DNA of 59,649 bases, filler included, from Platydemus manokwari (Eukaryota): NCBI GenBank assembly GCA_037951405.1. It is 5 parts of 5 records of this genome, joined end to end, with 100 filler letters (N's around TTAATTAATTAA, not from the genome) between each part and the next. Parts side by side here need not be neighbours in the genome. Positions count along the whole stretch, not along the records: positions 34,986 to 43,802 come from JBBMOY011344872.1; 4 more parts are not named here. The stretch is one strand, 5' to 3'. A program made the translations under genes and the position numbers. Every line of letters begins with the position of its first letter. The stretch's first letter is position 1. Shown here piece by piece: positions 38,282 through 41,807 of the stretch. The notes under the pieces were generated by a model, which saw only the letters and a list, made by a program, of their open reading frames with translations, was not told the DNA's origin and ran no database searches.

Positions 38282-41200
38282 ATGCTAAATGAATATGATT
38301 CTTGGCATGATAGTGATGAAGTAGATTCTGATTTGGAACAAGAGGCATATAGTTTATTATATTATAATAATGACGTAGAAAAAGAATCCGAAGTTATTAA
38401 TAATTCAAGTCTTAATAAAAATCCTAAAGAAAATATTGAAAGTTCGAATTTATCAGCATCAGCTAATTTAGATCAGTCAATTCTATTATCGTCAAGCTCT
38501 AGTCATTCTGTTATCGAAATTGACAGTTCATCAGATTCCGATTCAAATGGTTTTAAGTGCATTCGTAAAATGACATGTTCTAACCCAATTAACGCATTAT
38601 CAGTCGGGATTAGTTCTGATGAGGATGATTTTGATGATATCACAAGAAATACTGACAGATCCTCTTTAATAGAAAATAATGGATTAAGCAAAGATTCAAT
38701 TGGTTATTCTTTAAACACCGATAGTGATTTAGAAAGTTCAATTAATAAGGAAAATTCATCATTATTTATGAATGTCATCTCAGGAACAACTCCGTTAAAA
38801 TTTACAAATAATATTGTAAGTGATTTCAATAATGATTGACCAATTATTTTTTATCATAAGCAAAATACCGATGATTGGTCAATCGATTTTCAACCTTTGA
38901 GAAGTAAATATGGAAATCGTTATTTCGATAGTGGATCAAAATCAGTTTGTATGATATGCTCGAAAAAGGGTCATTCCGAAGAGGAATGCACTAGGGTTTG
39001 AATTCCTTATATATTATAGTAGGGGTCGTTTACAGTTATTGTTGTTGTTAGAGTGGTCCGATTTGTATTCTGTGTGGCGAGGAGGGTCATTTAAGTAAGA
39101 AATGTGATAATGTCGTCTGTTGTATTTGCTTACGTGACGATCATCAGCCAAAGTCTTGTCCATTCACGGCTACATTCATGCGTCAAACCTGTAAGAGGTG
39201 TGGCCAAAGGGGTCATGGTGATGAAGTTCGTAATATTGATTTTGTGATGATGTTTGAATAAATAATCGATGTTTATCTGTGTAGATTTGTCCCGATATTT
39301 GGCGGCAATACAAATTCACAACAAAAACTGGTCGGCCCGTATTGAAAAAGTGTTCCAGCCAAAACAAATCGACGGTTTATTGTGCAAATTGTGCGAAAAT
39401 GGGTCATTTTACCGAGCAATGTCCTCGAAGTCGAATGAATTCACGATTTTTAGGACCTCCTCCCATCATGGAAATTATTAAATTCGAAGATCATGACATC
39501 TATCCGTCGAAAGGATTGTCGTATTGTGTTGAACCCGATATATTGGTGAGCGATGAAGCAGAGTTGAACAAATCTGGTGAGGAGTTACCCTCATTTATTG
39601 AGAATATGGACGTCACAACGATGGTATGCGATGATGTTGCCAATAGCAACCAATCCAACTGTTCCATCGATGATGTCAGTCTCGACTCGTCAAGTGCCGA
39701 AGCGAACAGTTCGCAATTCGGACATCGTTTCATCATGTTGAGCCCGATAAAATCTACGCCATCAGTTGAACTCAACAAATCCAAATCAACTCTTCCAAAG
39801 CAAAAGCGATCAATGATTGAATCGTCAACACCTCGCAATAATCCAGCTGCCACGCGTCATGTGGCCATATTCGATCCTCTCAAACCCAAAGTGCCCACCA
39901 AACTACCGGGAATAACAACGGATTTGTTGAAGAAATTATTTCCAGAAGAAACACAAAATTATGACAAATTGCCGCCCGGTTTACGCAAGAAATTGCGCAA
40001 GCAGTTAAAAAATTTGATGTAAGCTTTTATAGTGTTTTGTTTGCATATTTCTCTATATATGGTTGCATATCACTCCATATTATTGTTGTATATTTCTCTA
40101 TAAATGGTTGCATATCACTCCATATTATTGTTGTATATTTCTCTATATATGCTTGCATATCACTCCATATTATTGTTGTATATTTCTCTATAAATGGTTG
40201 CATATCACTCCATGTAATTGTTGTATATTTTTCTATATATGCTTGCATATCACTCCATATTATTGTTGCATATTTCTCTATATATGCTTGCATATCACTC
40301 CATATCATTGTTGTATATTTCTCTATAAATGGCTGTATATCACAGGGGTGGCCAATCGGTCGATCTTGAAGCCAATTTTAGTCTATCGCGTGAGATGTTA
40401 TTCAAATGAAAAGTAGATCTTACGTACACAATAGTTGACCACCTCTGATATATAACAATAATGTGAAGTGATGTACAAACATTTGTAGAGAAATATAAAA
40501 CAATAATATAGAGTGATATACCAGAGGTGGCCAACTTTTGTGTATGTAAGATCGACTTTTCATTTGAATAACATCTCACGCGATAGACTAAAATTGGCTT
40601 CTAGATCGACCGGTTGACCATCCCTGTTATATATCATTCCATCTCAATGCTGTTTATCTCTTCATACCATAGCTATATATCACTCCCTATGATAGCTGTA
40701 TATCAATCCTTATAATTGTTGTATATCACTGTATAACAAAGTTTTATATCGAATCTGATTGATACATTATGATATTCTTTATTAACTCAATTGTCGTGAA
40801 TTTCTCGGCACTATTAAGTACAAAATAATTGTTGCACAGTCATGATTTCCTTGTCTGGTACAAACACACACACACACACATCGCTACATATGGAATTATT
40901 GATGAATATTCTATAAATTACACACACACACACACACACATTTACAAGTGATTTTTGTCACCAAATAATTGTCTGTGTTCATCTAATCATTTATATAAAA
41001 ATATCATATTTTAGTTATATGGATATCATTTTTATTTTCGAATCTCTCTTTCACTCCAATTTGTTCAAATTGCCATGGCTTGAATATGTCAGATCACTTG
41101 TCATTCCAAACAAATTAATTGATTTAAAAGGACACCTTTAATTAGTGATGATAGTGATGTCATAGCATATAATCATATTGGTGGTGCAACTTTAACCATA

Positions 41201-41807
41201 ATGTTGATCAATAATGGTGTACCTTAGATCGTGTTGATATCAATAATAAATATATTTATTATTCTGATATAATAATGGTGCTATTTATTGATATATATAT
41301 TCTGTAATCCCGATAAATATTCATCAATATTACCCCTGTAGTGATCATGGATATTTACCGGGAGATTCAAATCTCACTCAGGAACGAATGGAATTTTGGT
41401 TACAAGAGATATCAACTGGACGTAATTTAAGCTATCGGGATAAGAAACGATTGTTGGGAAGTGTATCAGCTGCGTTACATAGCATATCTGATCGTGTATC
41501 GATTAATGATGTGATTGATTTGACGAATAAAGATGAAATGGATTTCCAAACACAATCATTATCCGTTCCGGAATCCAGAAAAAAACGAAATAAATTTACT
41601 CGACAGGAAAAGAATTTAAAAAATATTGCAAAAGTGTCGAGAAAAGAGAAGAAGGATGTTCGTAAAATGGAGAAGGCTATCGAAAATTCAATCAAAGATC
41701 GTTTACGCGCTAATCGAAGCGTTGACAACAAAGAAAATCGATCAGCAGCAAAGAAAAATAAATTCAGAAAAAACCAAAGAAAATCAGAAATCATTCAATT
41801 ATTTTGA
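38282..41807 (+). CDS. ZCCHC7: ZCCHC7/Air1-Air2-like zinc-knuckle protein (TRAMP subunit); exons 38282-38815, 38861-38995, 39052-39225, 39285-40018, 41342-41807 (680 aa)
   Basis: Acidic/Ser-rich N-terminus, RYF, five CX2CX4HX4C knuckles (CMICSKKGHSEEEC, CILCGEEGHLSKKC, CCICLRDDHQPKSC, CKRCGQRGHGDEIC, CANCAKMGHFTEQC), the family motif CPDIWRQY and a basic C-terminus. The 1.3-kb last intron joins AT|T in frame. Confidence 0.9.
40041..40342 (+). repeat. 39-bp minisatellite (about 7.7 units) in ZCCHC7 intron 4, with degenerate continuation to about 40735
   Basis: Unit ttgtatatttctctata(a/t)atg(g/c)ttgcatatcactccatattattg repeated in tandem. Confidence 0.95.
40343..40447 (+). mobile_element. 105-bp hAT-type MITE, copy 1
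   Basis: Imperfect 13-bp TIRs CAGGGGTGGCCAA / TTGACCACCTCTG with 8-bp flanks; a second copy lies nearby. Confidence 0.85.
40522..40626 (-). mobile_element. 105-bp hAT-type MITE, copy 2 (inverted)
   Basis: Reverse complement of copy 1 with a few substitutions; ends CAGAGGTGGCCAA / TTGACCATCCCTG. Confidence 0.85.

What the first reader, a model, noticed from the sequence alone, without database searches (positions are those of the whole stretch)
40335..40634. Swapped 8-bp TSDs record a MITE-mediated micro-inversion inside a minisatellite
Neither inverted MITE has matching flanks as assembled: copy 1 has GTATATCA | ATATATAA and copy 2 has TGATATAC | TTATATAT. Reverse-complementing the 74 bp between them (40448-40521) restores two perfect TSDs, GTATATCA..GTATATCA and TTATATAT..TTATATAT. 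It also puts the enclosed satellite units back in the orientation and register of the upstream array (seen). So two independent hAT insertions hit the same satellite 74 bp apart, both at a TATAT core (target preference or local hopping), and the spacer was later flipped. It could still be an invertible segment. The pre-mRNA would form a hairpin of about 105 bp in the ZCCHC7 intron, a potential ADAR or siRNA substrate (inference).
Basis: partly seen in the sequence, partly recalled or inferred. Interest (0 to 1): 0.7.

Follow-up and report, generated by a model that had tools for sequence, protein, structure and literature searches.

The report
Tiny inversion between two inverted MITEs
Two inverted copies of a 105-bp hAT (Buster-type) miniature transposon bracket a 74-bp piece of a tandem repeat that has been flipped, a very small but otherwise textbook transposon-mediated inversion in the likely last intron of an Air2/ZCCHC7-like gene.

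Summary
MITE copy 1 (40343-40447, +) and copy 2 (40522-40626, inverted) differ at 8 of 105 positions. Their 8-bp flanks match only crosswise. Reverse-complementing the spacer 40448-40521 restores two perfect target-site duplications. It also restores the 45-bp satellite register, and only when exactly 8 nt are trimmed (56/66 against at most 33/64).

The element is a high-copy hAT MITE of the Buster lineage. Its terminus matches the published Buster2 terminus, and both restored duplications fit the Buster target nnnTAnnn.

Exchanged duplications are the classical signature of a transposon-mediated inversion (Galileo in Drosophila, inverted Ds pairs in rice). This is therefore a new, unusually small member of a known kind.

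A one-step hybrid-element (sister-chromatid) insertion gives the same structure (about 0.27) and could not be excluded.

The only public run is held as k=31 contigs. These confirm both inner junctions and the right outer junction, but none crosses a whole MITE, so the orientation was not verified independently. Mis-assembly remains at about 0.06.

The 105-bp RNA hairpin is predicted (-182 kcal/mol). Transcription, editing and siRNA production are untested.

The parts
40041..40342 (.). 45-bp minisatellite (22 + 23 nt subunits), 6.7 units, upstream of MITE copy 1
   Evidence: TRF gives period 45, 91% matches, score 508. Units are shown in register.
40335..40342 (+). Outer copy of TSD 1 (GTATATCA)
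   Evidence: TA at positions 4-5 fits the Buster target nnnTAnnn.
40343..40447 (+). MITE copy 1, 105 bp, hAT-Buster type. Termini are CAGGGGTGGCCAAT and, read inward from the 3' end, CAGAGGTGGTCAAC
   Evidence: Flanks of other family copies diverge exactly at 40343 (loose ends).
40368..40414 (+). 47-bp core identical between the two copies (partner 40555-40601); the likeliest crossover interval
40448..40521 (-). 74-bp spacer: 1.6 satellite units in inverted orientation. Carries the inner copy of TSD 2 (40448-40455, reverse complement) and of TSD 1 (40514-40521, reverse complement)
   Evidence: (I2-I8). A single-copy contig of 131 bp (depth 13.5) covers 40408-40538 (record 4).
40522..40626 (-). 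MITE copy 2, 105 bp, inverted relative to copy 1
   Evidence: Flanks of other family copies diverge at 40522.
40627..40634 (+). Outer copy of TSD 2 (TTATATAT)
   Evidence: A contig starting at 40618 confirms this junction (record 8).
40627..40760 (.). Degenerate 23-bp continuation of the satellite, downstream of copy 2
   Evidence: D2; period 23 at 40669-40730.
40019..41341 (+). Proposed intron (GTAAGC ... CCCCTGTAG) of the Air2/ZCCHC7-like gene, containing the whole structure
   Evidence: The donor, the acceptor and the kept reading frame into the ORF ending at TGA 41805-41807. This is a model only; there is no RNA evidence.
38948..40018 (+). Upstream exons with CCHC zinc knuckles (38948-38989, 39064-39105, 39118-39159, 39381-39422)
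   Evidence: Regex scan. Pfam zf-CCHC scores 21.4 bits on 39052-39258. Yeast AIR2 (2lli_A) matches at E = 6.6e-08.

Best explanation
This is a real micro-inversion. Two copies of a high-copy 105-bp hAT-Buster MITE inserted independently, in opposite orientation and 66 bp apart, into a 45-bp satellite. Each made its own 8-bp duplication (GTATATCA and TTATATAT) at a central-TA target. Later, intramolecular homologous recombination, or a replication template switch, between the two inverted copies flipped everything between the crossover points. The crossover most likely lay in the 47-bp identical core. The outcome is two chimeric MITEs, an inverted 74-bp spacer and exchanged TSDs, with no loss or gain of bases. 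Shown: the structure, the exact 8-bp duplications, the restored register, the family identity and the copy abundance. Inferred: the order of events, the crossover mechanism and its location. As a by-product, transcripts through the proposed intron can fold into a hairpin of about 105 bp. Taking recombination and hybrid-element insertion together, I put a real transposon-mediated inversion at about 0.8; the confidence given here is for the recombination route.
For: The exchanged TSDs and restored register are exact. No bases are lost or added at any of the four junctions, as expected for homologous exchange and not for end-joining after transposase cuts. The copies differ at 8 of 105 positions while all 16 TSD positions are perfect; this fits two different source copies that inserted recently. 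Divergence of 5-10% is typical of the family: 208, 537 and 660 laid contigs were at >=99%, 95-99% and 90-95% identity. Undoing a crossover in the core makes the terminal repeats of each parent agree better (12/14 each, against 11/14 now). In particular, the rare T at terminal position 10 then falls at both ends of one parent; this is weak evidence. Precedent within hAT exists: homologous recombination between two inverted Ds elements inverts the segment between them, and accounted for 11% of rearrangements in a rice line (PMC3239180). Exchanged TSDs plus chimeric copies proved this mechanism for Galileo (PMC2775673). A family of several thousand copies makes some chance pairs within 100 bp likely; summed depth was 85,000-156,000 against 15-17 for single-copy sequence. 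That copy estimate is rough and is my own arithmetic.
Against: Chimerism, the one feature that separates this route from hybrid-element insertion, could not be tested, because no family consensus or subfamily tree was obtainable. A 47-bp identical core is a short substrate for homologous recombination. The very short distance between the copies is explained more naturally by a local one-step event. The orientation itself is not confirmed by reads.
Confidence: 0.5

Rival explanations
1. One-step origin by hybrid-element insertion (sister-chromatid alternative transposition). A single MITE sat at one of the two sites. After replication, the transposase paired the left end of the copy on one sister chromatid with the right end of the copy on the other. 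It inserted this hybrid element into a target 66 bp away on the same chromatid. That single event creates the second, inverted copy, flips the intervening segment and places the old and new TSDs crosswise.
For: The predicted product is identical to what is seen. [quoted passage not shown] It explains the 66-74 bp proximity without any coincidence. Alternative transposition is documented for hAT elements, namely Ac/Ds (PMC3239180; list). The new target also fits nnnTAnnn.
Against: The two copies should be identical at birth, yet they differ at 8 of 105 positions while the TSDs show 0 of 16 differences. If all differences arose after the event, the chance that none fell in the 16 TSD positions is about 0.3 (my arithmetic). 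This is a mild argument, not a rejection. The mirrored T at terminal position 10 would need two independent hits in two copies.
Confidence: 0.27
2. Assembly artefact: the genome has the non-inverted spacer, and the assembler crossed over within the 47-bp core shared by the two arms.
For: Every 31-mer of the assembled form would also exist in the non-inverted form if the switch lay in the core. The contig data therefore cannot exclude it, and no contig crosses a whole MITE.
Against: The arms differ at 8 positions and share at most 47 identical bases, so any read of about 130 nt or more resolves the link. The piece runs without a gap through a 300-bp satellite and two copies of a MITE present in thousands of copies. 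That same region shatters in the k=31 contigs, which suggests a long-read assembly (inference). The assembled form is also the less parsimonious orientation for an assembler to invent by accident while keeping four clean junctions.
Confidence: 0.06
3. Transposase cuts at the two inner MITE ends released the 74-bp spacer, which was re-ligated in reverse by end-joining.
For: The two inner termini face each other as 'reversed ends', a known substrate of hAT transposases (papers listed).
Against: hAT excision leaves hairpinned flanking ends and footprints (established knowledge, not tested here). Here both inner junctions are exact to the base. The known products of reversed-ends transposition are deletions, duplications or inversions of flanking DNA with a new TSD, not a clean flip of the spacer.
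Confidence: 0.03

Closest known systems
Galileo-mediated inversions 2j, 2q7 and 2z3 of Drosophila buzzatii (ectopic recombination; PMC2775673)
   Same: Two copies of one TIR transposon lie in opposite orientation at the two breakpoints. TSDs are exchanged, no bases are lost or gained, and the same rival (hybrid-element insertion) has to be considered.
   Different: Those inversions span megabases, the elements are kilobases long, and chimerism was proven. Here the inverted segment is 74 bp, the elements are 105-bp MITEs of another superfamily (hAT-Buster, not P), and chimerism is untested.
Inversion of the inter-transposon segment by homologous recombination between two inverted Ds elements in rice OsRLG5-161 (PMC3239180)
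   Same: The superfamily is hAT, the elements are a closely linked inverted pair, and the segment between them is flipped with both elements retained.
   Different: That was an experimental line with active Ac transposase, tissue culture and kilobase-sized Ds elements. This is a natural, old event between 105-bp MITEs in an animal genome.
Hybrid element insertion / sister-chromatid transposition (P element, Ac/Ds)
   Same: It predicts exactly this product: an inversion flanked by two inverted copies, with the old and new TSDs placed crosswise and the insertion very close to the donor.
   Different: It requires the two copies to be identical at formation, whereas these differ at 8 of 105 positions. 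To my knowledge it has not been reported for an animal Buster MITE.
Buster2 non-autonomous hAT elements (PMC4298943) and Mar MITEs of Drosophila willistoni (PMC3517528)
   Same: The terminus matches. Buster2 has CAGGGGTGGCCAACCT and Mar has CAG(G/A)GGTAGGC; here the termini are CAG(G/A)GGTGGCCAA(C/T). All share 8-bp TSDs with a central TA, no coding capacity and amplification as short elements.
   Different: Its internal sequence is not alignable beyond the termini and a GTC(G/T)ATCGCG subterminal motif. No autonomous partner was seen.
Inverted TE duplications that yield dsRNA and siRNAs (maize Ac composite insertions, bioRxiv 10.1101/2020.01.07.897926)
   Same: An inverted pair of hAT sequences inside a transcribed region could make a hairpin RNA homologous to the whole family.
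   Different: dsRNA and siRNAs were measured there. Here only the fold is predicted and no RNA data exist.

Membership tests
hAT superfamily, Buster clade, non-autonomous (MITE) | 8-bp target-site duplication | tested here: met
   Both copies have perfect 8-bp duplications once the spacer is flipped, and the register test shows the duplicated length is exactly 8. Two unrelated elements with the same 14-nt termini in low-GC metagenome contigs have 8-bp TSDs: 8/8 in L047/L044 and 7/8 in L065/L009.
hAT superfamily, Buster clade, non-autonomous (MITE) | Short terminal inverted repeats beginning CAG (hAT YARNG type) and matching Buster termini | tested here: met
   The 14-nt termini agree at 11/14 within each copy. 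The four termini match the published Buster2 terminus at 12-14 of 16 positions (PMC4298943).
hAT superfamily, Buster clade, non-autonomous (MITE) | Target consensus nnnTAnnn (Buster), as opposed to nTnnnnAn (Ac) | tested here: met
   GTATATCA and TTATATAT both have TA at positions 4-5; the chance of both is 0.025 in this array. The consensus is taken from PMC3517528. The sample is only two sites, plus two related elements.
hAT superfamily, Buster clade, non-autonomous (MITE) | Short, non-coding, high copy number | tested here: met
   The element is 105 bp with no ORF. 1405 contigs were laid on it, and summed word depth was 85,000-156,000 against 15-17 for single-copy flanks. The tool warns that depth is not a copy number.
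hAT superfamily, Buster clade, non-autonomous (MITE) | A cognate autonomous element encoding a Buster transposase in the same genome | not testable with these tools
   Only this 8.8-kb piece of the genome is available.
TE-mediated inversion by ectopic recombination | Two copies of one family in opposite orientation at the two breakpoints | tested here: met
TE-mediated inversion by ectopic recombination | Exchanged TSDs with no deletion or duplication at the breakpoints | tested here: met
TE-mediated inversion by ectopic recombination | Both copies chimeric | tested here: inconclusive
   The only hint is that terminal position 10 becomes concordant in the de-chimerised parents. No family consensus was obtainable, because the reads tool was exhausted and the family is absent from the searchable collections.
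TE-mediated inversion by ectopic recombination | A non-inverted arrangement exists, or existed, in other chromosomes | not testable with these tools
   Only one run, held as k=31 contigs, was available.
Hybrid element insertion | The two flanking copies are identical, apart from later mutation | tested here: inconclusive
   There are 8 differences in 105 positions against 0 in 16 TSD positions. This is compatible with an old event at roughly P = 0.3.
Air1/Air2/ZCCHC7 (TRAMP zinc-knuckle protein), host gene | A cluster of CX2CX4HX4C knuckles with similarity to Air2 | tested here: met
   Four complete knuckles and one split knuckle. Pfam zf-CCHC scores above its cut-off on 39052-39258. AIR2 (2lli_A) matches at E = 6.6e-08. 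Orthology to ZCCHC7 itself was not tested.

The most novel reading that the evidence does not exclude
The structure was made in one step by hybrid-element (sister-chromatid) insertion of a single Buster MITE 66 bp from its donor site. It would then be a natural footprint of alternative transposition by a MITE in an animal genome. Such close inverted pairs may also still flip and feed hairpin siRNAs against the family.
Probability: 0.25. Interest if true: 0.45.

Novelty: new member of a known kind. Interest (0 to 1): 0.3.

Why it matters
This is an unusually clean, base-exact natural example of a transposon-mediated inversion at the smallest scale: 74 bp between 105-bp arms. Both target duplications and a periodic satellite act as internal rulers that prove the rearrangement without an outgroup. 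It shows that exchanged TSDs around close inverted MITE pairs can be read straight from an assembly. A genome-wide count of normal versus exchanged TSDs as a function of spacer length and arm identity would measure how often short inverted repeats recombine, or arise by alternative transposition, in an animal germ line. The locus itself has no evident functional consequence beyond a possible intronic dsRNA.

Tried and rejected
1. Reads test. One run was found, held only as Logan k=31 contigs. When laid on the region, the contigs confirm the inner junctions and the right outer junction. None spans a MITE, so the orientation and any polymorphism remain open.

3. Other family copies were sought for a consensus, TSD logo and chimerism test. 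A 24-nt core pattern gave no hit in metagenome, genome or viral contigs. A 19-nt terminal pattern gave 72 metagenome hits. Of these, 68 are chance matches in GC-rich bacterial contigs and 4 are related but different Buster-type elements. The four are useful for TSD and terminus checks but not for chimerism.

4. Rfam gave only sub-threshold matches to plant MITE-hairpin miRNA models (best: MIR6217 at 65 bits against a gathering score of 110). These reflect the long hairpin and not membership.

5. A single foldback element spanning 40343-40626 was rejected: its outer flanks GTATATCA and TTATATAT do not match.

6. An inverted duplication by fold-back replication was rejected: the spacer is not palindromic, and TSD 2 would not be duplicated.

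7. A composite element that transposes as a unit was rejected: the spacer with its junctions is single-copy (depth 13.5).

8. The ORFs running through the satellite (40027-40416) are artefacts of a 45-nt period, not genes.

9. Each MITE folded on its own is no more stable than shuffled sequence (z = 0.1 and 0.6).

10. The large protein searches were not used, because gene identity is peripheral here. The spliced model was not searched as a joined sequence. Exons were searched separately by reference, and joined them only inside a script to check the reading frame.

Full report
**Observation.** The piece contains a 45-bp minisatellite at 40041-40343, made of 22-nt and 23-nt subunits, with 6.7 units and 91% matches. 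It begins 22 bp after a coding exon.

Two 105-bp elements lie in it in opposite orientation: copy 1 at 40343-40447 and copy 2 at 40522-40626. They differ at 8 of 105 positions. In element coordinates these are 6, 10, 14, 25, 73, 82, 90 and 96. The longest identical run is 47 bp, at 40368-40414 in copy 1 and 40555-40601 in copy 2.

- Copy 1: GTATATCA | ATATATAA.
- Copy 2: TGATATAC | TTATATAT.

The reverse complement of the 74-bp spacer (40448-40521) begins with GTATATCA and ends with TTATATAT. Flipping it therefore gives each element a perfect 8-bp direct duplication.

**Is it more than chance?** The spacer is inverted satellite, 81-88% complementary to the upstream units (I2-I8). I rebuilt the MITE-free, flipped sequence from the window file and laid it on the 45-bp consensus.

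- The array runs on in phase through both insertion sites (41/45 and 37/45 for the two units concerned) and then decays into 23-bp units.
- The flipped spacer continues the phase only when exactly 8 nt are trimmed: 56/66 matches, against at most 33/64 for every other trim from 0 to 22.
- In the assembled orientation nothing exceeds 35/74. The 8-mers are therefore true duplications and not the next satellite unit.
- The two 8-mers occur 3 and 1 times among 487 array 8-mers. None of 200,000 random pairs of cut points in the array produced both duplications.

**What the element is.** In the one public run that holds the locus, 1405 contigs fall on the two arms. Summed word depth is 85,000-156,000, against 15-17 for the flanks. 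The flanks of the other copies diverge exactly at 40343 and 40522. This is a high-copy family with these boundaries.

The terminus CAG(G/A)GGTGGCCAA(C/T) matches the published terminus of the non-autonomous hAT family Buster2, CAGGGGTGGCCAACCT, at 12-14 of 16 positions (PMC4298943). It also resembles the Mar MITE of Drosophila willistoni (PMC3517528).

The Buster clade has the target consensus nnnTAnnn. Both restored duplications have TA at positions 4-5, which has a joint chance of 0.025 in this array.

A scan of metagenome contigs with a 19-nt terminal pattern found four low-GC contigs, representing two distinct insertions. They carry 219-bp and 433-bp elements with the same 14-nt termini and 8-bp duplications: CATTACAG/CAGTACAG and ATATAGAA/ATATAGAA, again with a central TA. 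These elements share with the window's MITE only the termini and a subterminal GTC(G/T)ATCGCG motif. The shared 'TATAT core' is simply the Buster target preference.

**How it arose.** Exchanged duplications around two inverted copies are the classical signature of a transposon-mediated inversion. For Galileo in Drosophila buzzatii they were used, together with chimerism of both copies, to prove ectopic recombination (PMC2775673). The same paper states that hybrid-element insertion gives a 'strikingly similar' product. In that process the two ends of one element on sister chromatids are inserted nearby. The only difference is that the two copies are then identical rather than chimeric. I derived the same result from the cut-and-paste geometry.

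Within hAT, both routes are documented. Homologous recombination between inverted Ds elements inverts the inter-transposon segment in rice, where it accounted for 11% of rearrangements, and alternative transposition also occurs there (PMC3239180).

The evidence here is as follows.
- All four junctions are exact, which argues against end-joining.
- The copies differ at 8 of 105 positions while the 16 duplicated positions are perfect. This mildly favours two independent source copies. If all differences arose after the event, the chance of none falling in the duplications is about 0.3 (my arithmetic).
- Undoing a crossover in the core makes the termini of each inferred parent agree better (12/14 each, against 11/14). 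It also places the rare T at terminal position 10 at both ends of one parent. This is weak evidence.
- Against the two-step route, the 66-bp distance between the two target sites is explained more naturally by a local one-step event. However, a family of several thousand copies in a genome of a few hundred megabases should contain some chance pairs within 100 bp. This is a rough estimate of mine.

I put recombination or template switching between two independent insertions at about 0.5 and hybrid-element insertion at about 0.27.

**Assembly artefact.** Only one run was found, and it is held as k=31 contigs.

- A 131-bp single-copy contig (depth 13.5) covers 40408-40538: the spacer, both inner junctions and the distinguishing letters of the inner MITE parts.
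- Another contig starts at 40618 and confirms the right outer junction.
- No contig crosses the 47-bp shared core. If an assembler had switched arms there, all 31-mers would be the same. The data are therefore silent on this point.
- Against an artefact, the arms differ at 8 positions, so any read of about 130 nt or more resolves the link.
- The piece also runs without a gap through a satellite and two copies of a very abundant MITE. That same region shatters in the k=31 contigs, which points to a long-read assembly (inference).

I leave about 0.06 for mis-assembly.

**Gene context and the hairpin.** Upstream on the + strand lie four complete CX2CX4HX4C knuckles and one split knuckle.

- The exon 39052-39258 passes the Pfam zf-CCHC cut-off.
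- The same exon matches yeast AIR2 (2lli_A, E = 6.6e-08).
- 'ZCCHC7-like' is therefore reasonable, although orthology was not tested.
- The frame ending at 40018 meets a GTAAGC donor.
- An acceptor (CCCCTGTAG) at 41341 keeps the frame into a lysine-rich ORF that ends at TGA 41805-41807.

The structure therefore lies in a plausible 1323-bp last intron. Otherwise it lies just past a TAA at 40020. No RNA evidence exists.

The exons were searched separately by reference. The joined model was not sent to any search; it was joined only inside the script to check the frame.

The RNA of 40335-40634 is predicted to fold into a near-perfect hairpin of about 105 bp (-182 kcal/mol, z = -25). Rfam gives only sub-threshold matches to plant MITE-hairpin miRNA models. 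ADAR editing and siRNA production remain inference. A maize precedent shows that inverted hAT duplications can yield silencing siRNAs (bioRxiv 10.1101/2020.01.07.897926).

**Verdict.** The specific two-step history is likely but is not separated from a one-step alternative. The orientation has not been verified independently. This is a new, very small member of a well-known kind of rearrangement. Its interest is modest, mainly as a clean exemplar and as a template for a genome-wide count.

Noticed in passing
window 40859-40881 and 40919-40941: Two (AC)10 microsatellites, each preceded by TACA and followed by CAT, lie 60 bp apart. They look like a short local duplication that carries the microsatellite (D6).
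   Followed up: no
window 40245 joined to 40522 (table 5): One contig (depth 9.6) joins 23 nt of satellite-like sequence ending at 40245 directly to a MITE start. It could be another MITE insertion in a related satellite unit elsewhere, a second allele of this locus, or a chance flank match. Its 8 flanking bases lack the central TA.
   Followed up: no
window 40384 / 40585 and 40415: The family is polymorphic T/G at element position 42 (37% G; with G the subterminal motif reads GTCGATCGCG, as in the metagenome relatives). The A at 40415 is private to copy 1: the family has C in 99% of depth. That makes it a usable locus-specific marker.
   Followed up: partly
L065:6370-6588, L009:3277-3495, L047:976-1408, L044:2279-2711: Low-GC (0.37-0.41) contigs in JGI metagenomes carry 219-bp and 433-bp non-autonomous elements with Buster2-type termini and 8-bp central-TA duplications. 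They are presumably eukaryotic DNA in environmental samples. The other 68 hits of the same 19-mer are chance matches in GC-rich bacterial contigs.
   Followed up: partly
window 40027-40416, both strands: ORFs of 93-117 codons run through the satellite only because its 45-nt period is a multiple of three. They are not genes.
   Followed up: yes
window 41255: A 1-base deletion in an A/T-rich stretch appears in part of the contigs (depth 12.7 of 46.6). It is probably a heterozygous or population indel in the intron (table 4).
   Followed up: no
window 38282-38839: An acidic, serine-rich 185-codon ORF with no Pfam match lies upstream of the zinc knuckles on the same strand. It is probably the N-terminal exon of the same Air2/ZCCHC7-like gene.
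   Followed up: no
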